In this document: piece after piece, positions 25,736-64,000 of the stretch
Layout of the letters: each line of letters begins with the position of its first letter
How positions within the stretch are numbered: the first letter of the stretch is position 1
DNA from: Octopus sinensis
Lineage: Eukaryota
Direction: 5' to 3'
Assembly (NCBI RefSeq): GCF_006345805.1
Contig: NW_021833252.1
Location: forward strand, 1 to 64,000
DNA: 64,000 bases
Program-made: the position numbers and the translations under genes
Notes under the pieces: model-generated
What the model was told of the DNA's origin: nothing
What the model saw: the letters and a program-made list of their open reading frames with translations, nothing else
The model's database searches: none

Positions 25736-25747
25736 CAAGTATGAAGT

Positions 25748-30258: not shown

Positions 30259-30685
30259 GTTTGTATATTACATATTTTTCTGTGCCTTTTTTTCTGTGTG
30301 TTAGTATTTTTACATATTTTTTATTTCATATATTTTTGGGACTCATTGACTCAGATAGCTGGATTTATGATTTCACTAGGTTAATTCTGTTTATAAAAAT
30401 TTAAATTAGGAGTATTACTTAAACCTTTAACCTCATATTTCAACAGCTTAACTGAAATTTAACCCACGTAACGGCAACTGAGAGGGATATCGGTGGAACA
30501 GAAACTGTGAGTACTACAGCTAATTTGACATTATTTTTGAATTCTGCATGCAAAAACATATACAATACAGGTATTCTTTTCTTTGGGACAAATTCTTTGT
30601 TGACCAGTGTTATTATTATCGTAGCAATTTTGGAGACAGACCCTAACCCTAACCCTAACCCTTCACACATACACGAATGCATAAA

Positions 30686-40705: not shown

Positions 40706-40912
40706 CCAGCAGTATAGCCCGGCATTGCTCAGGTTTGTTTCGACCCTTTAGAATTGGAATTTTTGAAAAGTAAAAATTTTGCATTATGCAACTTGTTATT
40801 CTCTTTAAGTGAACATTTTTCTGGTTGAAATACACCGAAAAATGGCGATGCAGCAGTAAAAAAATCGTAAAAAATAGGAATTTTCATAGAAAAAAAAGCA
40901 CCTTTTTTATGT
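40706..40912 (-). mobile_element. Second, truncated copy of the same Helitron in tandem
   Basis: Repeats 40316-40525 with substitutions. Confidence 0.75.
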
Positions 40913-40977
40913 AAGCGCATTGTGACCAGCGATGTGTAGCAACATCTGATAACCTGGTCGGTCACGGTGATCACGGT

Positions 40978-41400: not shown

Positions 41401-41684
41401 ACAAACGCGTGCGAGTTGACGTGCATATTCTTATGATGTTCCCGCAGATTCTCAGGTGAATAAGCTAACCGCTATTTGTGTTCGTAACATCTCCTTTACG
41501 ACGACTATGTGTTCATAACACACACAATTCATTATAGCACAAGGGATCCTGAGACGGCCGGTGTTTCGACATCGTTTTATCCCGTCAGCATAGGCACTCC
41601 CGGACTAATGAATGTAAGGGTCGAAACTCTTTTTTCTAAATTAAGCTGTTTGCTGTTTCTGCTGGCAGTTGCCAACCGATAACT

Positions 41685-42092
41685 GGATCTTTTCGGTTTG
41701 ACCGGCAGTTTTTCTAGCAGTCTCATATGAAATTGTCACCCATAATTATGACCCTTGCATTTCAATCTGTTTTAGGGTTAGAGTTAGGGTTAGGGGGAAG
41801 GGTATCGTTTTTTCTTCAGAAATTTAAATAAACCCAATCTGTTTCTTAAACAAGGGACATATTCATACGGCACAGAATGTTTTTTTTTTACCTCAATAGT
41901 CGTCACTGATTGGTTAAAATTGCAGAAATTGAAGAAAAACAACAACAAACATCTTACAAACCATAGAATTTTCTCAATAAAGCTACGAGAAAAATATGTT
42001 TTATAAACACATTCTACCAGTATACGAAGTTTAAAAGTGTTTAGTTACGTGGAAATTATTTTGAAAAACTGCCGGTTAAACCGAAAAGATCC
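41685..42092. mobile_element. MITE with TIRs of about 28 bp and an 8-bp TSD
   Basis: GGATCTTTTCGGTTTGACCGGCAGTTTT ... AAAACTGCCGGTTAAACCGAAAAGATCC. Flanks CGATAACT (41677-41684) and CGATAATT (42093-42100). Confidence 0.88.
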
Positions 42093-42605
42093 CGATAATT
42101 AATCATCGTATACACAGTGATGCGCGTGTTTCTGTGATATTTATATATATATCTGGGAGGCGGCGTAATTTAAAACTTTTAATTTCTTTTTTCGATCTCA
42201 ACAACCTTCGTCTTGACTCTAATGATTAATGTTTGTCGTAAGAGATTTTAACTTTTCATTTTTAAAAAGAAAAATTTGGCGTCTGCGAGAGTAGTGGTCG
42301 GAGGAGGGTCTTAATGGTGGTAGCAGCCTTCTAGTCATGTGACTATTGAAGAGATATTCTTTAAACTTTGAGAGAAGTGCGATAGCGATAGGGGACTGGG
42401 GAAGGGAGACAAGATGAGAATGAAGGGGAGCTGGAAGTAAAGAGAGAGGGAGAGAACAACAAAAGGAGACCTGAACTCGGCTGGAACTGTTCGCAGGTAA
42501 ATGGACTGGAACAGCACAAAATGTGGTCTGGTGCTCAAGGACACAGCAACAACACGATCCATTAGCCTGCACACCTCTACACGTTATCAGTAAAGTATTA
42601 GTATA

Positions 42606-42853
42606 GGATCTTTTCGGTTTGACCGCCAGTTTTTTAAAAAAATTTCCACGTAACTAAATACTTTTAAAATTCGAATACTGGTAGAATATGTTTATAAAAC
42701 ATCTTTATTCTCTTGGCTTTATTGAGAAAATTCTATAGTTTGTAAGATATTTGTTGTTTTTTTTCTTCAATTTCTGCAATTTCAATCAATCAATGACCGA
42801 CTATTGAGGTGAAAACATTCTGTGCCGTATGAATATGTCCCTCGTTTAAGAAT
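42606..42853. mobile_element. Truncated copy of the same MITE, opposite orientation
   Basis: Reverse complement of about 41845-42092. Confidence 0.85.
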
Positions 42854-42856
42854 CAG

Positions 42857-45800
42857 GGATCTTTTCGGTTTGAACGGCAGTTTTTTAAAATAATTTCCAT
42901 GTAACTAAACACTTTTAAACTTCGTATACCGGTAGAATGTGTTTATAAAACATCTTTTTCTCTTGGCTTTATTGAGAAAATTCTAGAGTGGATCTTTTCC
43001 TTTTGAACGGCATACAATTTCTAGTTAACTAAACACTTTAAAACTTCGTATACTAGTAGAATGTGTTTATAAAACATCTTTTTCTCTTGGCTTTATTGAG
43101 AAAATTCTATAGTGGATTTTTCCTTTTGAACGGTACACAATATCTAGTTAACTAAACGCTTTTAAACTTCGTATACTGGTAGAATGTGTTTATAAAACAT
43201 CTTTTTCTCTTGGCTTTAATGAGAAAATTCTATAGTGGATCTTTTCCTTTTGAACGGCACACAATTTCTAGTTAACTAAACACTTTTAAACTTCGTATAC
43301 TGGTAGAATGTGTTTATAAAACATCTTTTTCTCTTGCCCTTATTGAGAAAATTCTAAGGTGGATCTTTTCCTTTTGAACGGTACACAATTTCTAGTTAAC
43401 GGAACACTTTTAAACTACGTATACTGGTAGAATGTGTTTATAAAACATCTTTTTCTCTTGGCTTTATTGAGAAAATTCTATAGTGGATCTTTTCCTTTTG
43501 AACGGCATACAATTTCTAGTTAACTAAACACTTTTAAACTTCGTATACTGGTAGAATGTTATAAAACATCTTTTTCTCTTGGCTTTATTGAGAAAATTCT
43601 ACAGTGGATCTTTTCCTTTTGAAAGGTACACGATATCTAGTTAACTAAACACTTTTAAACTTCGTATACTGGTAGAATGTGTTTATAAAACATCTTTTTC
43701 TCTTGGCTTTATTGAGAAAATTCTATAGTGGATCTTTTCCTTTTGAACGGTACACGATATCTAGTTAACTAAACGCTTTTAAACATCGTATACTGGTAGA
43801 ATGTGTTTATAAAACATCTTTTTCTCTTGGCTTTATTGAGAAAATTCTATAGTGGATCTTTTCCTTTTGAACGGCACACAAATTCTAGTTAACTAAACGC
43901 TTGAAACTTCGTATACTGGTAGAATGTGTTTATAAAACATCTTTTTCTCTTGGCTTTATTGAGAAAATTCTATAGTGGATCTTTTCCTTTTGAACGGTAC
44001 ACGATATCTAGTTAACTAAACGCTTTTAAACTTCGTATACTGGTAGAATGTGTTTATAACACATCTTTTTCTCTTGGCTTTATTGAGAAAATTCTATAGT
44101 GGATCTTTTCCTTTTGAACGGCACACAAATTCTAGTTAACTAAACACTTGAAACTTCGTATACTGGTAGAATGTGTTTATAAAACATCTTTTTCTCTTGG
44201 CTTTATTGAGAAAATTCTATAGTGGATCTTTTCCTTTTGAACGGTACACGATATCTAGTTAACTAAACGCTTTTAAACTTCGTATACTGGTAGAATGTGT
44301 TTATAAAACATCTTTTTCTCTTGGCTTTATTGAGAAAATTCTATAGTGGATCTTTTCCTTTTGAACGGCACACAAATTCTAGTTAACTAAACACTTTAAA
44401 CTTCGTATACTGGTAGAATGTGTTTATAAAACATCTTTTTCTCTTGGCTTTTTTGAGAGATTTCTATAGTGGATCTTTTCCTTTTGAACGGTACACAATT
44501 TCTAGTTAACTAAACACGTTAAACTTCGTATACTGGTAGATTGTTTTTATAAAGCATCGTTTTCTCTTGGCTTTATTGACAAAATTCTATAGTGGATCTT
44601 TTCCTTTTGAACGGCAGACAATTTCTAGTTAACTAAACACGTTAAACTTCGTATACTGGTAGATTGTTTTTATAAAACATCTTTTTCTCTTGGCTTTATT
44701 GAGAAAATTCTATAGTGGATCTTTCCCTTTTGAAAGGTACACAATTTCTAGTTAACTAAACACTGTTAAACTTCTTATACTGGTAGATTGTTTTTATAAA
44801 ACATCGTTTTCACTTGGCTTTATTGAGAAAATTCTATAGTGGATCTTTTCCTTTTGAACGGCACACAATTTCTAGTTAACTAAACACGTTAAACTTCGTA
44901 TACTGGTAGATTGTTTTTATAAAACATCTTTTTCTCTTGGCTTTATTGAGAAAATTCTATATTGGATCTTTTCCTTTTGAAAGGCACACAATTTCTACTT
45001 AACTAAACGCTTCTAAACTTCGTTTACTTGTAGAATGTGTTTATAAAACATCTTTTTCTCTTGGCTTTATTGAGAAAATTCTATAGTGGATTTTTTCCTT
45101 TTGAACGGTACACAATTTGTAATTAACAAAGCACTTTTAAACTTCGTATACTGGTAGAATGTGTTTATAAAACATCTTTTTCTCTTGGCTTTATTGAGAA
45201 AATTCTATAGTGGATCTTTTCCTTTTGAACGGCACACAATTTCTAGTTAACTAAACGCTTTTAAACTTCGTATACTGGTAGAATATGTTTATAAAACATC
45301 TTTTTCTCTTGGCTTTATTGTGAAGATTCTATGGTGGATCTTTACCTTTTGAACGGCACACAATTTCTATTTAAGTAAACACTTTGAAACTTCGTATACT
45401 GGTAGATTGTTTGTATATAAAATGTTTTTCTCTTGGCCTTATTGAGAAAATTGTATAGTGGATCTTTTCCTTTTGAACGGCTCACAATTTCTAGTTAACT
45501 AAACACGTTAAACTTCGTATACTGGTAGATTGTTTTTATAAAACATCGTTTTCTCTTGGCTTTATTGAGAAAATTCTATAGTGGATCTTTTCCTTTTGAA
45601 CGGCAGACAATTTCTAGTTAACTAAACACGTGAAACTTCGTATACTGGTAGATTGTTTTTATAAAACATCTTTTTCTCTTGGCTTTATTGAGAAAATTCT
45701 ATAGTGTATCTTTCCCTTTTGAAAGGTACACAATTTCTAGTTAACTAAACACTGTTAAACTTCGTCTACTGGTAGATTGTTTTTATAAAACATCGTTTAC

Positions 45801-48800
45801 ACTTGGCTTTATTGAAAAAATTCTATAGTGGATCTTTTCCTTTTGAACGGCACACAATTTCTAGTTAACTAAACACGTTAAACTTCGTATACTGGTAGAT
45901 TGTTTTTATAAAACATCTTTTTCTCTTGGCTTTATTGAGAAAATTCTATAGTGGATCTTTTCCTTTTGAAAGGTACACAATTTCTAGTTAACTAAACACT
46001 GTTAAACTTCGTCTACTGGTAGATTGTTTTTATAAAACATCGTTTACACTTGGCTTTATTGAGAAAATTCTATAGTGGATCTTTTCCTTTTGAACGGCAC
46101 ACAATTTCTAGTTAACTAAACACGTTAAACTTCGTATACTGGTAGATTGTTTTTATAAAACATCTTTTTCTCTTGGCTTTATTGAGAAAATTCTATAGTG
46201 GATCTTTTCCTTTTGAACGGTACACAATTTCTAGTTAACTAAACACTGTTAAACTTCGTATACTGGTAGATTGTTTTTATAAAACATCTTTTTCTCTTGG
46301 CTTTATTGAGAAAATTCTATAGTGGATCTTTTCCTTTTGAACGGCACACAATTTCTAGTTAACTAAACGCTGTTAAACTTCGTTTAATTGTAGAATGTGT
46401 TTATAAAACATCTTTTTCTCTTGGCTTTATTGAGAAAATTCTATAGTGGATCTTTTCTTTTTTAACGGTACACAAATTCTAGTAAACAAAACACTTTTAA
46501 ACTTCGAATACCGGTAGATTGTGTTTATAAAACATCTTTTTCTCATGGCTCTATTCAGAAAATTCTATAGTGGATCTTTTCCTTTTGAACGTTACACAAT
46601 TTTTAGTTAACTAAACGCTTTTAAACTTCGTATACTGGTAGAATGTGTTTATACAACATCTGTTTGTTTTGTCTTTATTGAGAAAATATAATAGTGCATC
46701 TTTTCCTTTTGAACGGTACACAATATCTAGTTAACTAAATGCTTTTAAACTTCGTATGCTGGTAGATTGTTTGTATAAAACATCTTTTTCTCTTGGCTTT
46801 ATTGAGAAAATTCTACAGTGGATCTTTTCCTTTTGAACGGCACACAATTTCTAGTTAACTAAACACTTTTAAACTTCGTATACTGGTAGAATGTCTTTAT
46901 AAAACATCTTTTTCTCTTGGCTTTATTGAGAAAATTCTATAGTGGATTTTTTCCTTTTGAACGGTACACAATTTGTAATTAACAAAGCACTTTTAAACTT
47001 CGTATACTGGTAGAATGTGTTTATAAAACATCTTTTTCTCTTGGCTTTATTGAGAAAATTCTATAGTGGATTTTTTCCTTTTGAACGGTACACAATTTGT
47101 AATTAACAAAGCACTTTTAAACTTCGTATACTTGTAGAATGTGTTTATAAAACATCTTTTTCTCTTGGCTTTTTTGAGAGATTTCTATAGTGGATCTTTT
47201 CCTTTTGAACGGTACACAATTTCTAGTTAACTAAACACGTTAAACTTCGTATACTGGTAGATTGTTTTTATAAAGCATCGTTTTCTCTTGGCTTTATTGA
47301 CAAAATTCTATAGTGGATCTTTTCCTTTTGAACGGCAGACAATTTCTAGTTAACTAAACACGTTAAACTTCGTATACTGGTAGATTGTTTTTATAAAACA
47401 TCTTTTTTCTCTGGCTTTATTGAGAAAATTCTATAGTGGATCTTTCCCTTTTGAAAGGTACACAATTTCTAGTTAACTAAACACTGTTAAACTTCTTATA
47501 CTGGTAGATTGTTTTTATAAAACATCGTTTTCACTTGGCTTTATTGAGAAAATTCTATAGTGGATCTTTTCCTTTTGAACGGCACACAATTTCTAGTTAA
47601 CTAAACACGTTAAACTTCGTATACTGGTAGATTGTTTTTATAAAACATCTTTTTCTCTTGGCTTTATTGAGAAAATTCTATAGTGGATCTTTTCCTTTTG
47701 AAAGGCACACAATTTCTACTTAACTAAACGCTTCTAAACTTCGTTTACTTGTAGAATGTGTTTATAAAACATCTTTTTCTCTTGGCTTTATTGAGAAAAT
47801 TCTATAGTGGATTTTTTCCTTTTGAACGGTACACAATTTGTAATTAACAAAGCACTTTTAAACTTCGTATACTGGTAGAATGTGTTTATAAAACATCTTT
47901 TTCTCTTGGCTTTATTGAGAAAATTCTATAGTGGATCTTTTCCTTTTGAACGGCACACAATTTCTAGTTAACTAAACGCTTTTAAACTTCGTATACTGGT
48001 AGAATATGTTTATAAAACATCTTTTTCTCTTGGCTTTATTGTGAAAATTCTATAGTGGATCTTTCCCTTTTGAAAGGTACACAATTTCTAGTTAACTAAA
48101 CACTTTTAAACTTCGTATACTGGTAGATTGTTTGTATATAAAATGTTTTTCTCTTGGCCTTATTGAGAAAATTGTATAGTGGATCTTTTCCTTTTGAACG
48201 GCTCACAATTTCTAGTTAACTAAACACGTTAAACTTCGTATACTGGTAGATTGTTTTTATAAAACATCGTTTTCTCTTGGCTTTATTGAGAAAATTCTAT
48301 AGTGGATCTTTTCCTTTTGAACGGCAGACAATTTCTAGTTAACTAAACACGTGAAACTTCGTATACTGGTAGATTGTTTTTATAAAACATCTTTTTCTTG
48401 GCTTTATTGAGAAAATTCTATAGTGTATCTTCCCTTTTGAAAGGTACACAATTTCTAGTTAACTAAACACTGTTAAACTTCGTCTACTGGTAGATTGTTT
48501 TTATAAAACATCGTTTACACTTGGCTTTATTGAAAAAATTCTATAGTGGATCTTTTCCTTTTGAACGGCACACAATTTCTAGTTAACTAAACACGTTAAA
48601 CTTCGTATACTGGTAGATTGTTTTTATAAAACATCTTTTTCTCTTGGCTTTATTGAGAAAATTCTATAGTGGATCTTTTCCTTTTGAAAGGTACACAATT
48701 TCTAGTTAACTAAACACTGTTAAACTTCGTCTACTGGTAGATTGTTTTTATAAAACATCGTTTACACTTGGCTTTATTGAGAAAATTCTATAGTGGATCT

Positions 48801-51800
48801 TTTCCTTTTGAACGGCACACAATTTCTAGTTAACTAAACACTTTTAAACTTCGTATACTGGTAGATTGTTTTTATAAAACATCTTTTTCTCTTGGCTTTA
48901 TTGAGAAAATTCTATAGTGGATCTTTTCCTTTTGAACGGTACACAATTTCTAGTTAACTAAACACTGTTAAACTTCGTATACTGGTAGATTGTTTTTATA
49001 AAACATCTTTTTCTCTTGGCTTTATTGAGAAAATTCTATAGTGGATCTTTTCCTTTTGAACGGCACACAATTTCTAGTTAACTAAACGCTGTTAAACTTC
49101 GTTTAATTGTAGAATGTGTTTATAAAACATCTTTTTCTCTTGGCTTTATTGAGAAAATTCTATAGTGGATCTTTTCTTTTTTAACGGTACACAATTTCTA
49201 GTTAACTAAACACTTTTAAACTTCGAATACCGGTAGATTGTGTTTATAAAACATCTTTTTCTCATGGCTCTATTCAGAAAATTCTATAGTGGATCTTTTC
49301 CTTTTGAACGTTACACAATTTTTAGTTAACTAAACGCTTTTAAACTTCGTATACTGGTAGAATGTGTTTATACAACATCTGTTTGTTTTGTCTTTATTGA
49401 GAAAATATATAGTGCATCTTTTCCTTTTGAACGGTACACAATATCTAGTTAACTAAATGCTTTTAAACTTCGTATGCTGGTAGATTGTTTGTATAAAACA
49501 TCTTTTTCTCTTGGCTTTATTGAGAAAATTCTATAGTGGATCTTTTCCTTTTGAACGGCACACAATTTCTAGTTAACTAAACGCTTTTAATCTTCGTATA
49601 CTGGTAGAATGTGTTTATAAAACATCTTTTTCTCTTGGCTTTATTGAGAAAATTCTATAGTGGATTTTTTCCTTTTGAACGGTACACAATTTGTAATTAA
49701 CAAAGCACTTTTAAACTTCGTATACTGGTAGAATGTGTTTATAAAACATCTTTTTCTCTTGGCTTTATTGAGAAAATTCTATAGTGGATTTTTTCCTTTT
49801 GAACGGTACACAATTTGTAATTAACAAAGCACTTTTAAACTTCGTATACTTGTAGAATGTGTTTATAAAACATCTTTTTCTCTTGGCTTTATTGAGAAAA
49901 TTCTATAGTGGATTTTTTCCTTTTGAACGGTACCCAATTTGTAATTAACAAAACACTTTTAAACTTCGTATACTGGTAGAATGTGATTATACATCTTTTT
50001 CTCTTGGCTTTATTGTGAAAATTCTATAGTGGATTTTTTCCTTTTGAACGGTACACAATTTGTAATTAACAAAGCACTTTTAAACTTCGTATACTGGTAG
50101 AATGTGTTTATAAAACATCTTTTTGTCTTGGCTTTATTGAGAAAATTCTATAGTGGATTTTTTCCTTTTGAACGGTACACAATTTGTAATTAACAAAGCA
50201 CTTTTAAACTTCGTATACTGGTAGAATGTGTTTATAACACATCTTTTTCTCTTGGCTTTATTGAGAAAATTCTATAGTGGATCTTTTCCTTTTGAACGGC
50301 ACACAATTACTAGTTAACTAAACGCTTTTAAACTTCGTATATGGTAGAATGTGTCTATAAAACATATTTTTCTCTTGGCTTTATTGTGAAGATTCTATGG
50401 TGGATCTTTTCCTTTTGAACGGCACACAATTTCTATTTAAGTAAACACTTTTAAACTTCGTATACTGGTAGAATGTGTTTATAAAACATCTTTTTCTCTT
50501 GGCTTCATTGAGAAAATTCTATAGTGGATCTTTTCCTTTTGAACGGCTCACAATTTCTAGTTAACTAAACACTTTTTAACTTCGTATGCTGGTAGAATGT
50601 GTTTATAAAACATGTTTTTCTCTTGGCTTTATTGAGAAAATTCTATAGTGGATCTTTTCCTTTTGAACGGCACACAATTTCTAGTTAACTAAACACTTTT
50701 AAACTTCGTATACTGGTAGAATATGTTTATAAAACATCTTTTTCTCTTGGCTTTATTGAGAAAATTCTATAGTGGATTTTTTCCTTTTGAACGGTACAGA
50801 ATTTGTAATTAACAAAGCACTTTTAAACTTCGTATACTGGTAGAATGTGTTTATGAAACATCTTTTTCTCTTGGCTTTATTGAGAAAATTCTATAGTGGA
50901 TCTTTTCCTTTTGAACGCCACATAATTTCTAATTAACAAAACACTTTTAAACTTCGTATACTGGTAGAATGTGTTTATAAAACATCTTTTTCTCTTGGCT
51001 TTATTGAGAAAATTCTATAGTGGATCTTTTCCTTTTGAAGGCAACATAATTTCTAATTAACAAAACACTTTTACACTTCGTATACTGGTAGAATGTGTTT
51101 ATAAAACATCTTTTTCTCTTGGCTTTATTGAGAAAATTCTATAGTGGATCTTTTCCTTTTGAACGGTACACGATATCTAGTTAACTAAACGCTTGTAAAC
51201 TTCGTATACTGGTAGAATGTGTTTATAAAACATCTTTTTCTCTTGGCTTTATTGAGAAAATTCTATAGTGGATCTTTTCCTTTTGAACGGCACACAATTT
51301 CTAGTTAACTAAACACTTTTAAACTTCGTATACTGGTAGAATATGTTTATAAAACATCTTTTTCTCTTGGCTTTATTGAGAAAATTCTATAGTGGATTTT
51401 TTCCTTTTGAACGGTACAGAATTTGTAATTAACAAAGCACTTTTAAACTTCGTATACTGGTAGAATGTGTTTATGAAACATCTTTTTCTCTTGGCTTTAT
51501 TGAGAAAATTCTATAGTGGATCTTTTCCTTTTGAACGCCACATAATTTCTAATTAACAAAACACTTTTAAACTTCGTATACTGGTAGAATGTGTTTATAA
51601 AACATCTTTTTCTCTTGGCTTTATTGAGAAAATTCTATAGTGGATCTTTTCCTTTTGAAGGCAACATAATTTCTAATTAACAAAACACTTTTAAACTTCG
51701 TATACTGGTAGAATGTGTTTATAAAACATCTTTTTCTCTTGGCTTTATTGAGAAAATTCTATAGTGGATCTTTTCCTTTTGAACGGTACACGATATCTAG

Positions 51801-54800
51801 TTAACTAAACGCTTGTAAACTTCGTATACTGGTAGAATGTGTTTATAAAACATCTTTTTCTCTTGGCTTTATTGAGAAAATTCTATAGTGGATCTTTTCC
51901 TTTTGAACGGCACACAAATTCTAGTTAACTAAACACTTTAAACTTCGTATACTGGTAGAATGTGTTTATAAAACATCTTTTTCTCTTGGCTTTTTTGAGA
52001 GATTTCTATAGTGGATCTTTTTCTTTTGAACGGTACACAATTTCTAGTTAACTAAACACGTTAAACTTCGTATACTGGTAGAATGTGTTTATAAAACATC
52101 TTTTTCTCTTGGCTTCATTGAGAAAATTCTATAGTGGATCTTTTCCTTTTGAACGGTACACGATATCTAGTTAACTAAACGCTTTTAAACATCGTATACT
52201 GGTAGAATGTGTTTATAAAACATCTTTTTCTCTTGGCTTTATTGAGAAAATTCTATAGTGGATCTTTTCCTTTTGAACGGCACACAAATTCTAGTTAACT
52301 AAACTCGTTAAACTTCGTATACTGGTAGATTGTTTTTATAAAACATCGTTTTCTCTTGGCTTTATTGAGAAAATTCTATAGTGGATCTTTTCCTTTTGAA
52401 CGGCAGACAATTTCTAGTTAACTAAACTCGTTAAACTTCGTATACTGGTAGATTGTTTTTATAAAACATCTTTTTCTCTTGGCATTATTGAGAAAATTCT
52501 ATAGTGGATCTTTCCCTTTTGAAAGGTACACAATTTCTAGTTAACTAAACACTGTTAAACTTCGTATACTGGTAGATTGTTTTTATAAAACATCGTTTTC
52601 ACTTGGCTTTATTGAGAAAATTCTATAGTGGATCTTTTCCTTTTGAACGGCACACAATTTCTAGTTAACTAAACACGTTAAACTTCGTATACTGGTAGAT
52701 TGTTTTTATAAAACATCTTTTTCTCTTGGCTTTATTGAGAAAATTCTATAGTGGATCTTTTCCTTTTGAACGGTACACAATTTCTAGTTAACTAAACACT
52801 GTTAAACTTCGTTTACTTGTAGAATGTGTTTATAAAACATCTTTTACTCTTGGCTTTATTGAGAAAATTCTATAGTGGATCTTTTCCTTTGTAACGGTAC
52901 ACAATTTCTAGTTAACAAAACACTTTTAAACTTCGAATACCGGTAGAATGTGTTTATAAAACATCTTTTTCTCATGGCTCTATTGAGAAAATTCTATTGT
53001 GGATTTTTTCCTTTTGAACGGTACACAATTTCTAGTTAACTAAACGCTTTTAAACTTCGTATACTGGTAGAATGTGTTTATACAACATCTGTTTGTTTTG
53101 TCTTTATTGAGAAAATATAATAGTGGATCTTTTCCTTTTGAACGGTACACGATATCTAGTTAACTAAACGCTTGTAAACTTCGTATACTGGTAGAATGTG
53201 TTTATACATCTTTTTCTCTTGGCTTTATTGATAAAATTCTATAGTGGATCTTTTCCTTTTGAACGGTACACAATTTCTTGTTAACGAAACGCTTTTAAAC
53301 TTCGTATACTGGTAGAATGTGTTTATAAAACATCTTTTTCTCTTGGCTTTATTGAGAAAATTGTATAGTGGATCTTTCCCTTTTGAACGCCACATATTTT
53401 CTAATTAACAAAACACTTTTAAACTTCGTATACTGGTAGAATGTGTTTATAAAACATCTTTTTCTCTTGGCTTTATTGAGAAAATTCTATAGTAGATCTT
53501 TTCCTTTTGAACGAAATACAATTTCTAGTTAACTAAACACTTTTATACTTCGTATACTGGTAGATTGTTTTTATAAAACATCTTTTTCTCTTGGCTTTAT
53601 TGAGAAAATTCTATAGTGGATCTTTTCCTTTTGAACGGTACACAATTTCTAGTTAACAAAACGCTTTGAAACTTCGTATACTGGTAGAATGTGTTTATAA
53701 AACATCTTTTTCTCTTGGCTTTATTGAGAAAATTCTATAGTGGATCTTTTCCTTTTGAACGCCACATAATTTCTAATTAACAAAACACTTTTAAACTTCG
53801 TATACTGGTAGAATGTGTTTATAAAACATCTTTTTCTCTTGGCTTTATTGAGAAAATTCTATAGTGGATCTTTTCCTTTTGAACGAAATACAATTTCTAG
53901 TTAACTAAACACTTTTAAACTTCGTATACTGGTAGATTGTTTTTATAAAACATCTTTTTCTCTTGGCTTTATTGAGAAAATTCTATAGTGGATCTTTTCC
54001 TTTTGAACGGTACAAAATTTCTAGTTAACAAAACGCTTTGAATCTTCGTATACTGGTAGAATATGTTTATAACACATCTTTTTCTCTTGGTTTTATTGAG
54101 AAAATTCTATAGTGGATCTTTTCCTTTTGAACGGCACACAATTTCTAGTTAACTAAACAGTTTGAAACTTCGTATGCTGGTAGAATGTGTTTATAAAACA
54201 TCTTTTTCTCTTGGCTTTCTTGAGAAAATTCTATAGTGGATTTTTTCCTTTTGAACGGTACACAATTTGTAATTAACAAAGCACTTTTAAACTTCGTATA
54301 CTGGTAGAATGTGTTTATAAAACATCTTTTTCTCTTGGCTTTATTGAGAAAATTCTATAGTGGATCTTTTCCTTTTGAACGGTACACAATTTGTAATTAA
54401 CAAAGCACTTTTAAACTTCGGATACTGGTAGAATGTGTTTATAAAACATCTTTTTCTTTTGGCTTTATTGAGAAAATTCTATAGTGGATCTTTTCCTTTT
54501 GAACGGTACACAATTTGTAATTAACAAAGCACTTTTAAACTTGGGATACTGGTAGAATGTGTTTATAAAACATCTTTTTCTCTTGGCTTTATTGAGAAAA
54601 TTCTATAGTGGATTTTTTCCTTTTGAACGGTACACAATTTGTAATTAACAAAGCACTTTTAAACTTCGTATACTGGTAGAATGTGTTTATAAAACATCTT
54701 TTTCTCTTGGCTTTATTTAGAAAATTCTATAGTGGATTTTTTCCTTTTGAACGGTACACAATTTGTAATTAACAAAACACTTTTAAACTTCGTATACTGG

Positions 54801-57800
54801 TAGAATGTGTTTATACATCTTTTTCTCTTGGCTTTATTGAGAAAATTCTATAGTGGATTTTTTCCTTTTGAACGGTACACAATTTGTAATTAACAAAGCA
54901 CTTTTAAACTTCGTATACTGGTAGAATGTGTTTATAAAATATCTTTTTCTCTTGGCTTTATTGAGAAAATTCTATAGTGGATTTTTTCCTTTTGAACGGT
55001 ACACAATTTGTAATTAACAAAGCACTTTTAAACTTCGTATACTGGTAGAATGTGTTTATAAAACATCTTTTTCTCTTGGCTTTATTGAGAAAATTCTATA
55101 GTGGATTTTTCCTTTTGAACGGTACACAATTGTAATTAACAAAGCACTTTTAAACTTCGTATACTGGTAGAATGTATTTATAAAACATATTTTTTCTCTT
55201 GGCTTTGTTTAGAAAATTCGATAGTGGATTTTTTCCTTTTGAACGGTACACAATTTGTAGTTAACTAAACACTTTTAAACTTCGTACACTGGTAGAATGT
55301 GTTTATAAAACATCTATTTCTCTTGGCTTTTTTTGAGAAAGTTCAATAGTGGATCTTTTCCTTTTGAACGGCACACAATTTCTAGGTAACTAAACACTTT
55401 TAAACTTCGTAAACTGGTAGATTGTTTGTATAAAACATCTTTTTCTCTTGGCTTTATTGACAAAATTCTATAGTGGATCTTTTCCTTTTGAACGGCTCAC
55501 ATTTTCTAGTTAACTAAACGCTTTTAAACTTCGTATACTGGTAGAATGTGTTTATAAATCATCTTTTTCACTTGGCTTTATTGTGAAGATTCTATGGTGG
55601 ATCTTTTCCTTTTGAACGGCACACAATTTCTATTTAAGTAAACATTTTGAAACTTCGTATACTGGTAGATTGTTTGTTTATAACATGTTTTTCTCTTGGC
55701 TTTATTGAGAAAATTCTATAGTGGATTTTTTCCTTTTGAACGGTACACAATTTGTAATTAACAAAGCACTTTTAAACTTCGTATACTGGTAGAATGTGTT
55801 TATAAAACATCTTTTTCTCTTGGCTTTATTGAGAAAATTCTATAGTGGATTTTTTCCTTTTGAACGGTACACAATTTGTAATTAACAAAGCACTTTTAAA
55901 CTTCGTATACTGGTAGAATGTGTTTATAAAACATCTTTTTTCGTGGCTTTATTGAGAAAATTCTATAGTGGATCTTTTCCATTTGAACGGTACACAATTT
56001 CTAGTTAACAAAACGCTTTGAAACTTCGTATACTGGTAGAATGTGTTTATAAAACATCTTTTTCTCTTGGCTTTATTGAGAAAATTCTATAGTGGATCTT
56101 TTCCTTTTGAACGAAATACAATTTCTAGTTAACTAAACACTTTTAAACTTCGTATACTGGTAGATTGTTTTTATAAAACATCTTTTTCTCTTGGCTTTAT
56201 TGAGAAAATTCTATAGTGGATTTTTTCCTTTTGAACGGTACACAATTTGTAATTAACAAAACACTTTTAAACTTCGTATACTGGTAGAATGTGTTTATAA
56301 AACATCTTTTTCTCTTGGCTTTATTGAGAAAACTCTATAGTGGATCTTTTCCTTTTGAACGGTACACAATTTGTAATTAACAAAACACTTTTAAACTTCG
56401 TATACTTGTAGAATGTGTTTATAAAACATCTTTTTCTCTTGGCTTTATTGAGAAAATTCTATAGTGGATTTTTTCCATTTGAACGGTACACAATTTGTAA
56501 TTAACAAAGCACTTTTAAACTTCGTATACTGGTAGAATGTGTTTATAAAATATCTTTTTCTCTTGGCTTTATTGAGAAAATTCTATAGTGGATTTTTCCC
56601 TTTTGAACGGTACACAATTTGTAATTAACAAAGCACTTTTAAACTTCGTATACTGGTAGAATGTGTTTATAAAACATCTTTTTCTCTTGGCTTTATTGAC
56701 AAAATTCTATAGTGGATTTTTTCCTTTTGAACGGTACACAATTTGTAATTAACAAAGCACTTTTAAACTTCGTATACTGGTAGAATGTATTTATAAAACA
56801 TATTTTTTCTCTTGGCTTTGTTTAGAAAATTCTATAGTGGATTTTTACCTTTTGAACGGTACACAATTTGTAGTTAACTAAACACTTTTAAACTTCGTAC
56901 ACTGGTAGAATGTTTTATAAAACATCTATTTCTCTTGGCTTTTTGAGAAAGTTCTATAGTGGATCTTTTCCTTTTGAACGGCACACAATTTCTAGGTAAC
57001 TAAACACTTTTAAACTTCGTATACTGGTAGATGTTTGTATAAAACATCTTTTTCTCTTGGCTTTATTGACAAAATTCTATAGTGGATCTTTTCCTTTTGA
57101 ACGGCTCACAATTTCTAGTTAACTAAACACATTTTAAACTTCGTATACTGGTAGAATGTGTTTATAAAACATTTTTCTCTTGGCTTTATTGAGAAAATTC
57201 TATAGTGGATCTTTTCCTTTTGAACGGCACACAATTTCTAGTTAACTAAAAACTTTTAAACTTCGTATACTGGTAGAATGTGTTTATAAAACATCTTTTT
57301 CTCTTGGCTTTATTGAGAAAATTCTATAGTGGATTTTTTCCTTTTGAACGGTACACAATTTGTAATTAACAAAGCACTTTTAAACTTCGTATACTGGTAG
57401 TAGAATGTGTTTATAAAACATCTTTTCTCTTGGCTTTATTGAGAAAATTCTATAGTGGATTTTTTCCTTTTGAACGGTACACAATTTGTAATTAACAAAG
57501 CACTTTTAACCTTCGTATACTGGTAGAATGTGTTTATAAAACATCTTTTCTCTTGGCTTTATTGAGAAAATTCTGTAGTGGATTTTTTCCTTTTGAACGG
57601 TACACAATTTGTAATTAACAAAGCACTTTTAAACTTCGTATACTGGTAGAATGTGTTTATAAAACATCTTTTTCTCGTGGCTTTATTGAGAAAATTCTAT
57701 AGTGGATTTTTTCCATTTGAACGGTACACAATTTCTAGTTAACAAAACGCTTTGAAACTTCGTATACTGGTAGAATGTGTTTGTAAAACATCTTTTTCTC

Positions 57801-60800
57801 TTGGCTTTATTGAGAAAATTCTATCGTGGATCTTTTCCTTTTGAACGAAATACAATTTCTAGTTAACTAAACACTTTTAAACTTCGTATACTGGTAGATT
57901 GTTTTTATAAAACATCTTTTTCTCTTGGCTTTATTGAGAAAATTCTATAGTGGATTTTTTCCTTTTGCACGGTACACAATTTGTAATTTACAAAACACTT
58001 TTAAACTTCGTATACTGGTAGAATGTGTTTATAAAACATCTTTTTCTCTTGGCTATATTGAGAAAACTCTATAGTGGATCTTTTCCTTTTGAACGGTACA
58101 CAATTTGTAATTAACAAAACACTTTTAAACTTCGTATACTGGAAGAATGTGTTTATAAGACATCTTTTTCTCTTGGCTTTATTGAGAAAATTCTATAGTG
58201 GATTTTTTCCTTTTGAACGGTACACAATTTATAATTAACAAAGCACTTTTAAACTTCGTATACTGGTAGAATGTGTTTATAAAACATCTTTTTCTCTTGG
58301 CTTTATTGAGAAAATTCTATAGTGGATTTTTTCCTTTTGAACGGTACACAATTTGTAATTAACAAAGCACTTTTAAACTTCGTATACTGGTAGAATGTAT
58401 TTATAAAACATATTTTTTCTCTTGGCTTTGTTTAGAAAATTGTATAGTGGATTTTTTCCTTTTGAACGGTACACAATTTGTAGTTAACTAAACACTTTTA
58501 AACTTCGTACAGTGGTAGAATGTGTTTATAAAACATCTATTTCTCTTGGCTTTTTTTGAGAAAGTTCAATAGTGGATCTTTTCCTTTTGAACGGCACACA
58601 ATTTCTAGGTAACTAAACACTTTTAAACTTCGTAAACTGGTAGATTGTTTGTATAAAACATCTTTTTCTCTTGGCTTTATTGACAAAATTCTATAGTGGA
58701 TCTTTTCCTTTTGAACGGCTCACATTTTCTAGTTAACTAAACGCTTTTAAACTTCGTATACTGGTAGAATGTGTTTTATAAATCATCTTTTCACTGGCTT
58801 TATTGTGAAGATTCATTATGGTGGATCTTTTCCTTTTGAACGGCACACAATTTCTATTTAAGTAAACATTTTGAAACTTCGTATACTGGTAGATTGTTTG
58901 TTTATAACATGTTTTTCTCTTGGCTTTATTGAGAAAATTCTATAGTGGATTTTTTCTTTGAACGGTACACAATTGTAATTAACAAAGCACTTTTAACTTC
59001 GTATACTGGTAGAATGTGTTTATAAAACATCTTTTTCTCTTGGCTTTATTGAGAAAATTCTATAGTGGATTTTTTCCTTTTGAACGGTACACAATTTGTA
59101 ATTAACAAAGCACTTTAAACTTCGTATACTGGTAGAATGTGTTTTATAAAACATCTTTTCGTGGCTTTATTGAGAAAATTCTATAGTGGATTTTTCCATT
59201 TGAACGGTACACAATTTCTAGTTAACAAAACGCTTTGAAACTTCGTATACTGGTAGAATGTGTTTAAAAACATCTTTTTCTCTTGGCTTATTGAGAAAAT
59301 TCTATAGTGGATCTTTTCCTTTTGAACGAAATACAATTGTAGTTAACTAAACACTTTTAAACTTCGTATACTGGAGATTGTTTTTATAAAACATCTTTTT
59401 CTCTTGGCTTTATTGAGAAAATTCTATAGTGGATTTTTTCCTTTTGAACGGTACACAATTTGTAATTAACAAAACACTTTTAAACTTCGTATACTGGTAG
59501 AATTGTTTATAAAACATCTTTTCTCTTGGCTTTATTGAGAAAACTCTATAGTGGATCTTTTCCTTTTGAACGGTACACAATTTGTAATTAACAAAACACT
59601 TTTAAACTTCGTATACTTGTAGAATGTGTTTATAAAACATCTTTTTCTCTTGGCTTTATTGAGAAAATTCTATAGTGGATTTTTTCCATTTGAACGGTAC
59701 ACAATTTGTAATTAACAAAGCACTTTTAAACTTCGTATACTGGTAGAATGTGTTTATAAAACATCTTTTTCTCTTGGCTTTATTGAGAAAATTCTATAGT
59801 GGATTTTTTCCTTTTGAATGGTACACAATTTGTAATTAACAAAGCACTTTTAAACTTCGTATACTGGTAGAATGTATTTATAAAACATATTTTTTCTCTT
59901 GGCTTTATTTAGAAAATTCTATAGTGGATTTTTTCCTTTTTAAACGGTACACAATTGTAGTTAACTAAACACTTTTAAACTTAGTATACTTAGAATATGT
60001 GTAATATGTTTATAAAACATTATTTCTCTTGGCTTTATTGAGAAAATTCTATAGTGGACCTTTTCCTTTTGAACGGCACACAATTTCTAGGTAACTAAAC
60101 ACTTTTAAACTTCGTAAACTGGTAGATTGTGTTATAAAACATCTTTTTCTCTTGCTTTATTGAGAAAATTCTATAGTGGATCTTTTCCTTTTGAACGGTA
60201 CACAATCTAGTTAACTAAAACGCTTTTAATCTTCGTATACTGGTAGAATGTGTTTATAAAACATCTTTTTCTCTTGGCTTTATTGAGAAAATTCTATAGT
60301 GGATTTTTTCCTTTTGAACGGTACACAATTGTAATTAACAAAGCACTTTTAACTTCGTATACTGGTAGAATGTGTTTATAAAATATCTTTTTCTTTCTTG
60401 GCTTTATTGAGAAAATTCTATAGTGGATTTTTCCTTTTGAACGGTACACAATTTGTAATTAACAAGCACTTTTAAACTTCGTATACTGGTAGAATGTGTT
60501 TATAAAACATCTTTTTCTCTTGGCTTTATTGACAAAATTCTATAGTGGATTTTTTCCTTTTGAACGGTACACAATTTGTAATTAACAAAGCACTTTTAAA
60601 CTTCGTATACTGGTAGAATGTATTTATAAAACATATTTTTTCTCTTGGCTTTGTTTAGAAAATTCTATAGTGGATTTTTACCTTTTGAACGGTACACAAT
60701 TTGTCGTTAACTAAACACTTTTAAACTTCGTACACTGGTAGAATGTGTTTATAAAACATCTATTTCTCTTGGCTTTTTTGAGAAAGTTCTATAGTGGATC

Positions 60801-63800
60801 TTTTCCTTTTGAACGGCACACAATTTCTAGGTAACTAAACACTTTTAAACTTCGTAAACTGGTAGATTGTTTGTATAAAACATCTTTTTCTCTTGGCTTT
60901 ATTGACAAAATTCTATAGTGGATCTTTTCCTTTTGAACGGCTCACAATTTCTAGTTAACTAAACACATTTTAACTTCGTATACTGGTAGAATGTGTTTAT
61001 AAAACATGTTTTTCTCTTGGCTTTATTGAGAAAATTCTATAGTGGATCTTTTCCTTTTGAACGGCACACAATTTCTAGTTAACTAAACACTTTTAAACTT
61101 CGTATACTGGTAGAATGTGTTTATAAAACATCTTTTTCTCTTGGCTTTATTGAGAAAATTCTATAGTGGATTTTTTCCTTTTGAACGGTACACAATTTGT
61201 AATTAACAAAGCACTTTTAAACTTCGTATACTGGTAGAATGTGTTTATAAAACATCTTTTTCTCTTGGCTTTATTGAGAAAATTCTATAGTGGATTTTTT
61301 CCTTTTGAACGGTACACAATTTGTAATTAACAAAGCACTTTTAAACTTCGTATACTGGTAGAATGTGTTTATAAAACATCTTTTTCTCTTGGCTTTATTG
61401 AGAAAATTCTGTAGTGGATTTTTTCCTTTTGAACGGTACACAATTTGTAATTAACAAAGCACTTTTAAACTTCGTATACTGGTAGAATGTGTTTATAAAA
61501 CATCTTTTTCTCGTGGCTTTATTGAGAAAATTCTATAGTGGATTTTTTCCATTTGAACGGTACACAATTTCTAGTTAACAAAACGCTTTGAAACTTCGTA
61601 TACTGGTAGAATGTGTTTGTAAAACATCTTTTTCTCTTGGCTTTATTGAGAAAATTCTATCGTGGATCTTTTCCTTTTGAACGAAATACAATTTCTTGTT
61701 AACTAAACACTTTTAAACTTCGTATACTGGTAGATTGTTTTTATAAAACATCTTTTTCTCTTGGCTTTATTGAGAAAATTCTATAGTGGATTTTTTCCTT
61801 TTGCACGGTACACAATTTGTAATTACAAAAAACACTTTTAAACTTCGTATACTGGTAGAATGTGTTTATAAAACATCTTTTTCTCTTGGCTTTATTGAGA
61901 AAACTCTATAGTGGGATCTTTCTCCTTTTGAACGGTACACAATTTGTATTAACTAAACACTTTTAAACTTCGTATACTGGAGAATGTGTTAAAACATCTT
62001 TTCTCTTGGCTTTATTGAGAAAATTCTATAGTGGTTTTTTCCTTTTGAACGGTACACAATTAGTAATTAACAAAGCACTTTTAAACTTCGTATACTGGTA
62101 GAATGTGTTTATAAAACATCTTTTTCTCTTGGCTTTATTGAGAAAATTCTATAGTGGATTTTTCCTTTTGAACGGTACACAATTTGTAATTAACAAAGCA
62201 CTTTTAAACTTCGTATACTGGTAGAATGTGTGTTTATAAAACATCTTTTTCTCTTGGCTTTATTGAGAAAATTCTATAGTTGATTTTTTCCTTTTGACTG
62301 GTACACAATTTGTAATTAACAAAGTACTTTTAAACTTCGTATACTGGTAGAATGTATTTATAAAACATATTTTTTCTCTGGCTTTATTAGAAAATTCTAT
62401 AGTGGATTTTTTCCTTTTGAAAGGTACACAATTTGTAATTAACAAAAAGCACTTTTAAACTTCGTATACTGGTAGAATGTGTTTATAAAACATCTTTTCT
62501 CTTGGCTTTATTGAGAAAATTCTATAGTGGATTTTTCCTTTTGAACGGTACACATTTGTAATTAACAAAACACTTTTAAACTTCGTATACTGGTAGAATG
62601 TGTTTATAAAACATCTTTTTCTCTTGGCTTTATTGACAAAATTCTATAGTGGATTTTTTCCTTTTGAACGGTACACAATTGTAATTAACAAAGCACTTTT
62701 AAACTTCGTATACTGGTAGAATGTGTTTATAAAACATCTTTTTTCTCTGGCTTTGATTTAGAAAATTCTATAGTGGATTTTACCTTTTGAACGGTACACA
62801 ATTTGTCGTTAACTAAACACTTTTAAACTTCGTATACTGGTAGAATGTGTTTATAAAACATCTTTTCTCTTGGCTTTTTTGAGAAAGTTCTATAGTGGAT
62901 CTTTTCCTTTTGAACGGCACACAATTTCTAAGGTAACTAAACACTTTTAACTTCGTATACTGGTAGATGTTGTTGTATAAAACATCTTTTCTCTGGCTTT
63001 ATTGAGAAAATTCTATAGTGGATCTTTTCCTTTTGAACGGCTCACAATTTTTAGTTAACTAAACACATTTTAACTTCGTATACTGGTAGAATGTGTTTAT
63101 AAAACATGTTTTCTCTTGGCTTTATTGAGAAAATTCTATAGTGGATCTTTTCCTTTTGAACGGCACACATTTCTAGTTAACTAAACACTTTTAAACTTCG
63201 TATACTGGTAGAATGTGTTTATAAAACATCTTTTTCTCTTGGCTTTATTGAGAAAATTCTATAGTGGATTTTTTCCTTTTGAACGGTACACAATTTGTAA
63301 TTAACAAAGCACTTTTAAACTTCGTATACTAGTAGTGGTAGAATGTGTTTATAAAACATCTTTTTCTCTTGGCTTTATTGAGAAAATTCTATAGTGGATT
63401 TTTCCTTTTGAACGGTACACAATTTGTAATTAACAAAGCACTTTTAAACTTCGTATACTGGTAGAATGTGTTATAAAACATCTTTTTCTTTGGCTTTATT
63501 GAGAAAATTCTATAGTGGATCTTTTCCTTTTGAACGGTACACAATTTGTAATTAACAAAGCACTTTTAAACTTGGGATACTGGTAGAATGTGTTTATAAA
63601 ACATCTTTTTCTCTTGGCTTTATTGAGAAAATTCTATAGTGGATTTTTTCCTTTTGAACGGTACACAATTTGTAATTAACAAAGCACTTTTATACTTCGT
63701 ATACTGGTAGAATGTGTTTATAAAACATCTTTTTCTCTTGGCTTTATTGAGAAAATTCTATAGTGGATTTTTTCCTTTTGAACGGTACACAATTTGTAAT

Positions 63801-64000
63801 TAACAAAGTACTTTTAAACTTCGTATACTGGTAGAATGTATTTATAAAACATATTTTTTCTCTTGGCTTTATTGAGAAAGTTCTATAGTGGACCTTTTCC
63901 TTTTGAACGGCACACAATTTCTAGTTAACTAAACACTTTTAAACTTCGTAAACTGGTAGATTGTTTGTATAAAACATCTTTTTCTCTTGGCTTTATTGAG
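42857..64000. repeat. Satellite 2: 124-bp AT-rich monomer, about 170 units, continues past the window end
   Basis: 124-bp period (43621 to 43745, 61141 to 61265). The monomer matches the terminal segment of the MITE. Confidence 0.97.

What the first reader, a model, noticed from the sequence alone, without database searches (positions are those of the whole stretch)
42606..64000. Satellite 2 is an amplified MITE end, with ancestral and transitional forms at the array edge
Seen: the monomer matches the reverse complement of 41961-42092 (TIR plus subterminal region of the intact MITE). The edge shows a series: intact MITE (41685-42092), truncated inverted copy (42606-42853), a first 133-bp monomer with the ancestral TIR GGATCTTTTCGGTTTGAACGGCAGTTTT (42857-42989), then 124-bp monomers with a derived TIR GGATCTTTTCCTTTTGAACGG. 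Inference: this is the birth site or a founding edge of a transposon-derived satellite, giving about 170 tandem degenerate TIRs that might still bind a transposase-derived protein.
Basis: partly seen in the sequence, partly recalled or inferred. Interest (0 to 1): 0.75.

Follow-up and report, generated by a model that had tools for sequence, protein, structure and literature searches.

The report
Satellite DNA born from a transposon end
A tandem array of at least 21 kb in what looks like an octopus-type genome is an amplified 124-bp end piece of a small DNA transposon, with the intermediate steps preserved at the array edge; it is a clean example of a known way in which satellite DNA arises.

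Summary
At 41685-42092 lies a 408-bp MITE with 30-bp terminal inverted repeats (one mismatch) and an 8-bp target-site duplication. At 42606-42856 lies an inverted partial copy, covering MITE positions 1-254. It abuts a 133-bp first unit (42857-42989), followed by 169 further full units and one partial unit of about 124 bp that run off the window end.

All later units share five changes that the first unit, the partial copy and both MITE ends lack: GG>CT at TIR positions 11-12, a 9-bp deletion of the inner TIR, and two substitutions. The direction is therefore MITE to satellite.

Both edge junctions start exactly at base 1 of the TIR. I infer that transposase made them, by insertion of one copy into another. 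Unequal exchange then expanded the array, as a 22-unit block duplication at 99.0% identity shows.

TIR shape and TSD fit the Merlin superfamily, which is reported as abundant in Octopus. The host is a cephalopod, judged from a LINE reverse transcriptase.

The "birth site" claim cannot be tested from one window. Continued protein binding at the TIR remnant gains no support, because the remnant is no better conserved than the rest of the unit.

This is a new member of a known kind, of moderate to low interest.

The parts
41677..41684 (.). Left target-site duplication CGATAACT of the intact MITE
   Evidence: matches the right flank CGATAATT at 7 of 8 positions
41685..42092 (+). Intact 408-bp MITE. 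TIR-L is 41685-41714 and TIR-R is 42063-42092 (29/30 match, both start 5'-GG). No ORF longer than 52 aa. It carries a telomere-like stretch, TTAGGGTTAGAGTTAGGGTTAGGG, at about 41772-41798
42093..42100 (.). Right target-site duplication CGATAATT
42101..42605 (.). Spacer between the two MITE termini that face each other. It lies outside both elements. The stretch 42093-42605 has no other copy in the window
   Evidence: only the self-match
42606..42856 (+). Partial MITE copy in inverted orientation (MITE reverse-complement positions 1-254, 89.5% identity). It starts with a full TIR and stops at an internal position, where the next TIR begins. Under my model it is a copy interrupted by an insertion rather than a truncated one
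42857..42989 (+). Unit 1, 133 bp. It keeps the ancestral TIR (GG at positions 11-12 and the 9 bp AGTTTTTTA). It shares the 3' breakpoint (...ATTCTAGAGT|GGATC) and the C>A change (GAACGG) with the satellite
42990..64000 (+). 169 full units and one partial unit of about 124 bp with the derived TIR remnant GGATCTTTTCCTTTTGAACGG. The array runs off the window end. Mean identity to the consensus is 94.9%; mean pairwise identity is about 92%
44471..49909 (+). Tandem duplication of a 22-unit block (44471-47191 and 47192-49909), 99.0% identical against a background of about 92%. It marks recent unequal exchange
54238..62155 (+). Zone of multi-unit block repeats at offsets of 13, 26 and 31 units, 96.6-97.9% identical

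Best explanation
The array is a satellite DNA derived from one end of a non-autonomous cut-and-paste DNA transposon. The element is a MITE whose 30-bp TIR starts 5'-GG and which makes an 8-bp target-site duplication, features that fit the Merlin superfamily.

Shown: the repeated unit equals the first 133 bp of the element, that is, the TIR plus subterminal DNA. The first unit at the edge keeps the ancestral sequence. One variant that lost 9 bp of the inner TIR and changed GG to CT makes up all later units.

Inferred (about 0.5 within this explanation): the first tandem pair arose when one MITE copy inserted into another copy of the family in the same orientation. This would have happened once at position 133/134 and once at 254/255. 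Each event places a complete terminus directly after an internal position of the host copy, which gives two adjacent direct repeats of the end piece.

Shown in part: unequal exchange between these direct repeats, and later between multi-unit blocks, expanded the array to at least 21 kb.

The array encodes nothing. I expect it to behave as an ordinary, probably heterochromatic, tandem repeat that persists through amplification dynamics rather than through a cellular function.
For: Identity of the unit with the MITE end:
- Unit 1 matches the MITE at 93.8% and later units at about 90-93%.

Polarity:
- Both TIRs of the intact MITE, the partial copy and unit 1 agree on GG at positions 11-12 and on the 9 bp.
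- None of the 169 later units has either state.
- The later units are monophyletic in 194 of 200 bootstraps, and unit 1 groups with them in 140 of 200.
- The consensus is closer to unit 1 (91.9%) than to the MITE or the partial copy (88.7% each).

The MITE is a real mobile element:
- TIR match of 29/30 and TSD match of 7/8. The TIR occurs 4 times in the window against 0 in shuffles.

Transposase-made junctions:
- Both edge junctions (42856|42857 and 42989|42990) place base 1 of the TIR directly after an internal MITE position, with no flanking DNA and no microhomology.
- In a tandem array the phase is arbitrary. The point where homology with the MITE wraps around is nevertheless exactly the element's terminus, and this happens twice independently.

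Expansion by unequal exchange:
- A 22-unit block is duplicated at 99.0% identity, and blocks at 13-, 26- and 31-unit offsets are 96.6-97.9% identical.

Precedent:
- TE dimers made by double or nested insertion that expand by unequal exchange are documented in PMC5932611. MITE-derived and TIR-derived satellites are reviewed in PMC12628747.

Merlin fit:
- Merlin TIRs are 24-462 bp, start 5'-GG and carry 8-9-bp TSDs. That survey found 191 Merlin sequences in Octopus bimaculoides (PMC8101967).
- The window's LINE reverse transcriptase has cephalopod best hits: Argonauta hians at 66% and Acanthosepion pharaonis at 51%.
Against: - Only one complete MITE copy is visible, so family status, a consensus and copy number are untested.
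- The (unit 1 + satellite) grouping rests on one substitution plus the shared breakpoint, with 70% bootstrap.
- The nested-insertion step needs two same-orientation self-insertions within 400 bp. The far side of the array, where the matching target-site duplications and the displaced remainders of the host copies should lie, is outside the window.
- The four candidate target sites (CGATAACT, TTAGTATA, AGAATCAG, TCTAGAGT) share no obvious motif.
- No transposase gene is present in the window, so the superfamily assignment rests on end features alone.
Confidence: 0.8

Rival explanations
1. The origin is the same (the MITE end) but no transposase was involved. The first tandem copies arose by replication slippage, template switching during double-strand-gap repair after an excision, or end joining, and were then expanded by unequal exchange.
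For: Abortive gap repair is the accepted source of internally deleted derivatives of DNA transposons (established knowledge). PMC5932611 notes Bari1 arrays whose junctions lack TIR sequence and which have a partial element at the 5' edge, so not all TE arrays carry clean insertion signatures. The far-side target-site duplications that would prove insertion cannot be seen.
Against: Both independent junctions fall exactly on base 1 of the TIR. Random breakpoints would do this roughly once in 130-400 per junction. No microhomology is visible at either junction.
Confidence: 0.25
2. This locus is not the birth site. The 124-bp satellite arose elsewhere or is carried inside a mobile composite element. 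This array, with its edge, reached this place by transposition or segmental duplication, or is one of many arrays with similar edges.
For: Tandem-repeat-carrying MITEs and Helentron-borne arrays that disperse satellite-like repeats are well documented in molluscs and Xenopus (PMC12628747; PMC7492417 listed). Units 2-18 are already fully derived and as homogenised as the interior, so the 124-bp variant need not have formed next to unit 1. A second satellite in the window (33540-40370) also looks TE-end-derived, which suggests a general process in this genome.
Against: The edge shows a continuous, in-register series from the MITE copy through unit 1 to the array. One ancestral base is enriched in the first 48 units. 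Neither observation excludes a copy of an older edge.
Confidence: 0.4
3. The direction is reversed: the satellite is older and the MITE family formed by capturing one monomer and acquiring an inverted copy of its start.
For: Scalvenzi and Pollet proposed capture of pre-existing tandem repeats by MITEs for Xenopus miDNA4, as summarised in PMC12628747.
Against: - Homology with the MITE covers exactly one unit and starts at the element terminus, which capture of an arbitrary array fragment does not predict.
- The left TIR of the MITE is not adjacent to any monomer-like DNA, yet it carries the GG and the 9 bp that all 169 bulk units lack.
- The partial copy continues colinearly with the MITE for 121 bp past the unit boundary.
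Confidence: 0.04
4. The array is functional chromatin, for example centromeric, and its TIR remnants are kept as binding sites for a transposase-derived protein in the manner of CENP-B.
For: Units 119-130 bp long form an uninterrupted AT-rich array (about 29% GC) of at least 21 kb with higher-order blocks. Positions 6-20 of the unit, inside the remnant, vary little, with a minor-allele frequency of about 0.02.
Against: - The TIR remnant as a whole is not better conserved than the rest of the unit (rank 92 of 124).
- Other blocks (positions 51-70 and 96-124) are equally invariant.
- The inner third of the TIR is deleted and two further bases are changed.
- No chromatin or cytological data are available.
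Confidence: 0.05

Closest known systems
TE tandems formed by double or nested insertion and expanded by unequal exchange (hobo, P element, R1 and Bari1 arrays in Drosophila melanogaster; McGurk and Barbash 2018, PMC5932611)
   Same: The junctions lie at intact transposon termini. A small tandem made by insertion serves as the seed. Later growth is by unequal exchange, with higher-order blocks. A partial element sits at the array edge, as in the Bari1 arrays.
   Different: Here the unit is only the terminal 133/124 bp (a terminus-to-internal junction) rather than a whole element, and the element is a MITE. The target-site duplication that proves insertion cannot be seen within the window.
MITE-derived satellites: Xstir and miDNA4 in Xenopus, SGM in Drosophila guanche, pearl/Cg170 and tandem-repeat-containing MITEs in bivalves (reviewed in PMC12628747)
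   Same: A satellite monomer is homologous to part of a MITE. MITE, composite and array forms occur together. The host phylum (Mollusca) is known for such repeats.
   Different: In most of those cases the repeat is an internal core flanked by both MITE arms. Here the repeated unit includes the terminal inverted repeat itself and starts at the element's first base. No cephalopod case turned up in my literature searches.
Tetris foldback element and the TIR-220 satellite of Drosophila virilis
   Same: Tandem repeats derived from the terminal-repeat region of a DNA transposon expand into satellite arrays.
   Different: Foldback elements carry the repeats inside long inverted termini at both ends. 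Here the array has a single orientation as far as can be seen, and the neighbouring MITE's terminus faces the array instead of pointing outward.
Merlin superfamily of DNA transposons (Feschotte 2004; PMC8101967)
   Same: 8-bp TSD, a TIR that starts 5'-GG, and a TIR length of 30 bp within the reported 24-462 bp. Merlin is reported as abundant in Octopus bimaculoides.
   Different: No transposase could be linked to this MITE. The assignment rests on end features only.

Membership tests
MITE (non-autonomous TIR DNA transposon) | Terminal inverted repeats at both ends | tested here: met
   30-bp TIRs matching at 29/30 positions, at 41685-41714 and 42063-42092
MITE (non-autonomous TIR DNA transposon) | Target-site duplication flanking the element | tested here: met
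   CGATAACT and CGATAATT match at 7 of 8 positions. The chance of this for one fixed 8-mer pair is about 4e-4
MITE (non-autonomous TIR DNA transposon) | Small size and no coding capacity | tested here: met
   408 bp; the longest ORF inside it is 52 aa
MITE (non-autonomous TIR DNA transposon) | Many dispersed copies in the genome | not testable with these tools
   The window holds one full copy, one partial copy and the array. No eukaryotic genome collection is available. Pattern scans of the metagenome, prokaryote and viral collections gave only chance 21-29-bp seeds
Merlin superfamily | 8- or 9-bp TSD | tested here: met
   8 bp; criterion from PMC8101967
Merlin superfamily | TIR of 24-462 bp with a conserved terminal 5'-GG | tested here: met
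   GGATCTTTTCGG..., 30 bp; criterion from PMC8101967
Merlin superfamily | Autonomous partner encoding a DDE_Tnp_IS1595 transposase with the same TIRs | not testable with these tools
   The window has no transposase ORF, only LINE reverse transcriptase and endonuclease ORFs
hAT superfamily | 8-bp TSD together with short TIRs that start 5'-YARNG (criterion recalled from memory) | tested here: not met
   The TSD length fits, but the TIR starts GGATC
Satellite DNA | Long head-to-tail array of a monomer of about 100-400 bp | tested here: met
   171 units, modal length 124 bp, at least 21.1 kb, uninterrupted
Satellite DNA | High genomic abundance and heterochromatic or centromeric location | not testable with these tools
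   Needs the whole genome, FISH or ChIP
TE array by double or nested insertion (PMC5932611) | Tandem junction at an intact transposon terminus | tested here: met
   Base 1 of the TIR follows internal positions 254 and 133 directly
TE array by double or nested insertion (PMC5932611) | Target-site duplication associated with the inserted copy | not testable with these tools
   The second copy of each predicted 8-mer would lie beyond the far end of the array, outside the window
TE array by double or nested insertion (PMC5932611) | Expansion by unequal exchange | tested here: met
   A 22-unit block is tandemly duplicated at 99.0% identity, and other multi-unit blocks are 96.6-97.9% identical
Tandem-repeat-containing MITE (bivalve or Xstir type) | Repeats form an internal core flanked by non-repeated left and right arms with TIRs | tested here: inconclusive
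   At the visible edge the repeat unit itself starts with the TIR, and the only arm is the partial copy at 42606-42856. The other side cannot be seen

The most novel reading that the evidence does not exclude
This edge is the actual founding site of a genome-wide, possibly centromere-associated, cephalopod satellite. In that case each step would be preserved in one place: host MITE copy, nested insertion, 133-bp unit, 124-bp deletion variant, then block amplification. The conserved core of the TIR remnant (unit positions 6-20) would be retained as a binding site for a Merlin-derived protein.
Probability: 0.04. Interest if true: 0.75.

Novelty: new member of a known kind. Interest (0 to 1): 0.3.

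Why it matters
Satellites that originate from transposable elements are well documented, but loci that keep the intermediate steps are uncommon. Here the order of events can be read from one sequence: a terminus-to-internal junction, then a 133-bp unit, then a 124-bp deletion variant, then multi-unit block duplication.

The locus also gives a precise, cheaply checked prediction for the far edge of the array. That prediction would discriminate a transposase-made seed from a repair-made seed.

My literature searches found no satellite study in cephalopods, so the locus is a useful entry for repeat annotation of octopod genomes. The window's second satellite looks TE-end-derived as well. None of this changes current understanding of satellite origins.

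Tried and rejected
1. Exact-pattern scans for the TIR (GGATCTTTTCNNTTTGANCGG) in the metagenome, prokaryote-genome and viral collections gave 58, 35 and 1 loci. Each locus had a single match. BLAST showed that none extends beyond 21-29 bp, so these are chance hits and no relative was found.
2. A protein search with a 61-aa ORF read from the satellite, meant to reach other contigs through gene calls, found nothing.
3. An exact look-up of the window's reverse transcriptase ORF found no record. One call failed on a frame error.
4. BLAST of the MITE against the rest of the window found no further copy, only a 22-bp match at 30641-30662.
5. A global higher-order period was sought and rejected. Mean identity by lag is flat at 91-93%, and only local block duplications exist.
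6. An edge-to-interior gradient in identity to the consensus or to the MITE was sought and not found. Units 2-18 are 96.3% identical to the consensus, at least as high as any interior block.
7. Microhomology at the two junctions was considered and rejected.
8. A foldback-element reading was rejected because the MITE terminus and the array terminus face each other across the spacer instead of pointing outward.
9. A megablast self-comparison of the array with a 700-bp, 97% filter returned no rows. The block duplications were confirmed by global alignment instead.
10. One Biopython neighbour-joining run timed out and was replaced by a numpy implementation.
11. Rfam and tRNA scans found nothing in the finding's range.

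Full report
**What is there**

The window is animal DNA rich in microsatellites, LINE fragments and several tandem arrays. A 571-aa stretch of a LINE reverse transcriptase ORF (11990-13702, minus strand) has named best hits in the cephalopods Argonauta hians (66%) and Acanthosepion pharaonis (51%). An unnamed NCBI contig of assembly GCA_024449705.1 scores 71%. The host is therefore a cephalopod, probably an octopod. This is an inference from a transposable-element protein, not an identification.

**The array**

TRF finds one array from 42902 to the window end, with period 124, 170.6 copies and 92% matches. I cut the array in phase at the motif GGATC...

- This gives 170 complete units and a 111-bp partial unit at position 64000.
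- 103 units are exactly 124 bp. The first is 133 bp and the others are 119-130 bp.
- All units lie on one strand and nothing is inserted among them.
- GC content is about 29%.
- Mean identity to the consensus is 94.9%. Mean pairwise identity is about 92% at all lags, so there is no global higher-order period.

**The MITE**

The segment 41685-42092 is 408 bp long.

- Its first and last 30 bases are inverted repeats with one mismatch.
- It is flanked by CGATAACT on the left and CGATAATT on the right, an 8-bp target-site duplication matching at 7 of 8 positions.
- The 29-bp TIR, allowing up to three mismatches, occurs four times in the window and never in 100 shuffles. The sites are the two MITE ends, 42606 and 42857.
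- The element has no ORF above 52 aa.

**The series at the edge**

BLAST and MAFFT show three steps.

- 42606-42856 is the reverse complement of MITE positions 155-408. It therefore covers positions 1-254 counted from the MITE's right end, at 89.5% identity.
- 42857-42989 is positions 1-133 again, at 93.8% identity.
- Every later unit is the same 133 bp minus nine bases.

The only difference is that I end the partial copy at 42856, not 42853.

**Polarity**

Five positions or indels separate the bulk of the array from everything else:

- G>C and G>T at TIR positions 11 and 12;
- loss of AGTTTTTTA, the inner part of the TIR;
- two substitutions just inside that deletion.

None of the 169 later units has the other state at any of these. 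Unit 1, the partial copy and both TIRs of the intact MITE all have it. The left TIR is an independent witness because it lies in inverted orientation next to DNA unrelated to the monomer. The bulk state is therefore derived.

Further support comes from trees and distances.

- Unit 1 shares the array's 3' breakpoint (...ATTCTAGAGT followed by GGATC). It also shares one substitution (GACCGG to GAACGG) with the array.
- In neighbour-joining trees with gaps ignored, the later units form one group in 194 of 200 bootstraps. Unit 1 joins them against the MITE and the partial copy in 140 of 200.
- The consensus is 91.9% identical to unit 1 and 88.7% identical to each of the other two.

The reverse direction, in which a MITE is built from a captured monomer, would require two things. 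The captured piece would have to be exactly one unit long and begin at what became the terminus. The left TIR would also have to have gained the nine bases independently. I reject it.

**How the first tandem arose (inference)**

In a tandem array the phase is arbitrary. The informative point is where homology with the MITE wraps around. It wraps exactly at base 1 of the element, where the target-site duplication begins in the intact copy.

The same holds at the junction between the partial copy and unit 1 (...AAGAATCAG|GGATC). There the MITE continues ...AAGAAACAG|ATTGGG. Neither junction shows flanking DNA or microhomology.

Two independent breakpoints on the exact terminus point to cleavage and joining by a transposase. 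The simplest route is insertion of one family member into another in the same orientation.

- Such an insertion puts a complete end directly after an internal position of the host copy. This creates two adjacent direct repeats of the end piece.
- On this reading the partial copy is interrupted rather than truncated.
- Insertion-made TE tandems that expand into arrays, including terminus-to-internal junctions, are documented in Drosophila (PMC5932611).

I give this step about 0.5. The proof would be the second copies of the 8-bp target sites and the displaced remainders of the host copies. Those lie beyond the far end of the array, outside the window. A repair-based or slippage-based origin is the main rival for this step.

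**Expansion (shown in part)**

- Units 14-35 (44471-47191) and 36-57 (47192-49909) are 99.0% identical over 2.7 kb, against a background of about 92%.
- Further blocks at offsets of 13, 26 and 31 units between 54238 and 62155 are 96.6-97.9% identical.
- The first roughly 55 units alternate C and T at unit position 22. Later units show a 13-unit pattern.

These are the marks of unequal exchange acting on multi-unit blocks.

**Is there a gradient?**

Apart from unit 1, hardly.

- Units 2-18 are 96.3% identical to the consensus, at least as high as any interior block.
- Only the ancestral C at position 22 is enriched in the first 48 units (25/48 against 32/121, Fisher p = 0.002).
- Other apparently ancestral states occur in blocks that follow the local duplications and look like recurrent changes.

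**Superfamily**

An 8-bp TSD fits hAT, P or Merlin. The TIR starts 5'-GG and is 30 bp long, which matches the published description of Merlin: TIRs of 24-462 bp, a terminal 5'-GG and TSDs of 8-9 bp (PMC8101967). That survey reports 191 Merlin sequences in Octopus bimaculoides. The usual hAT terminus (YARNG, recalled from memory) is not present. Without a transposase this remains a fit, not a proof of membership.

The TIR remnant (unit positions 1-22) has a mean minor-allele frequency of 0.063, against 0.054 for the rest of the unit. It ranks 92 of 124 circular 22-bp windows. A low-variation core at positions 6-20 exists, but positions 51-70 and 96-124 are equally invariant. Nothing therefore singles out the remnant as a preserved binding site. 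The idea is not excluded, but it gains no support.

**Birth site?**

The in-register series excludes a chance neighbourhood. A single window cannot tell a founding edge from a copied edge, or from one of many similar edges.

- Searches for other copies failed. The sequence collections at hand are prokaryotic, viral or metagenomic, and they returned only chance seeds.
- A search through ORFs read from the satellite found nothing.

**Comparison with what is known**

TE-derived satellites, including ones derived from MITEs and from TIR regions, are reviewed in PMC12628747. Bivalve and Xenopus MITEs usually carry the repeats as an internal core. Here the unit includes the terminus itself.

My literature searches for cephalopod satellite work found nothing relevant.

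I file this as a new member of a known kind. It is a tidy example with a testable prediction, but it is not surprising to a specialist.

Noticed in passing
window 33540-40370, 40371-40560, 40708-40914, 3637-3680, 28798-28835: Satellite 1 (period 120/241 bp) starts near 33540, not at the TRF row start of 34849. Its right edge runs into a non-repeated sequence (40371-40560) that recurs at 40738-40914 (89.9%). There it is preceded by only a partial monomer (40708-40740). Fragments of that monomer piece also lie at 3637-3680 and 28798-28835 on the minus strand. This satellite too looks like an amplified end piece of a dispersed element.
   Followed up: partly
window 41772-41798: The intact MITE carries a telomere-like stretch, TTAGGGTTAGAGTTAGGGTTAGGGGG, in its internal region.
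   Followed up: no
window 11426-14212 (-), 14892-15646 (+), 17007-20410 (+): LINE copies with endonuclease, reverse transcriptase and zf-RVT-like ORFs lie in opposite orientations and are partly broken into several ORFs. They are bordered by (TATC)n and (TCTC)n microsatellites. The best named relatives are cephalopod proteins.
   Followed up: partly
window 22602-22957 and 23331-24249: Two short tandem arrays, 190 bp x 1.9 copies and 184 bp x 5 copies. The 184-bp unit contains a tRNA B-box-like GTTCGAATTCC, and I recall such sequences as octopus SINE-like. They may be SINE-derived tandems. The recollection was not checked.
   Followed up: no
window 5346-7054: A 191-bp tandem repeat with 9 copies at 97% identity and 46-49% GC, unrelated to the other satellites.
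   Followed up: no
window 27913-27985: tRNA-Ser (anticodon GGA) predicted by ARAGORN and matched by Rfam tRNA at 40.3 bits. It could be a gene or a SINE head.
   Followed up: no
window 25746-26350 and 31531-31822: Two-copy tandem duplications with periods of 304 bp and 147 bp, at 88-91% identity.
   Followed up: no
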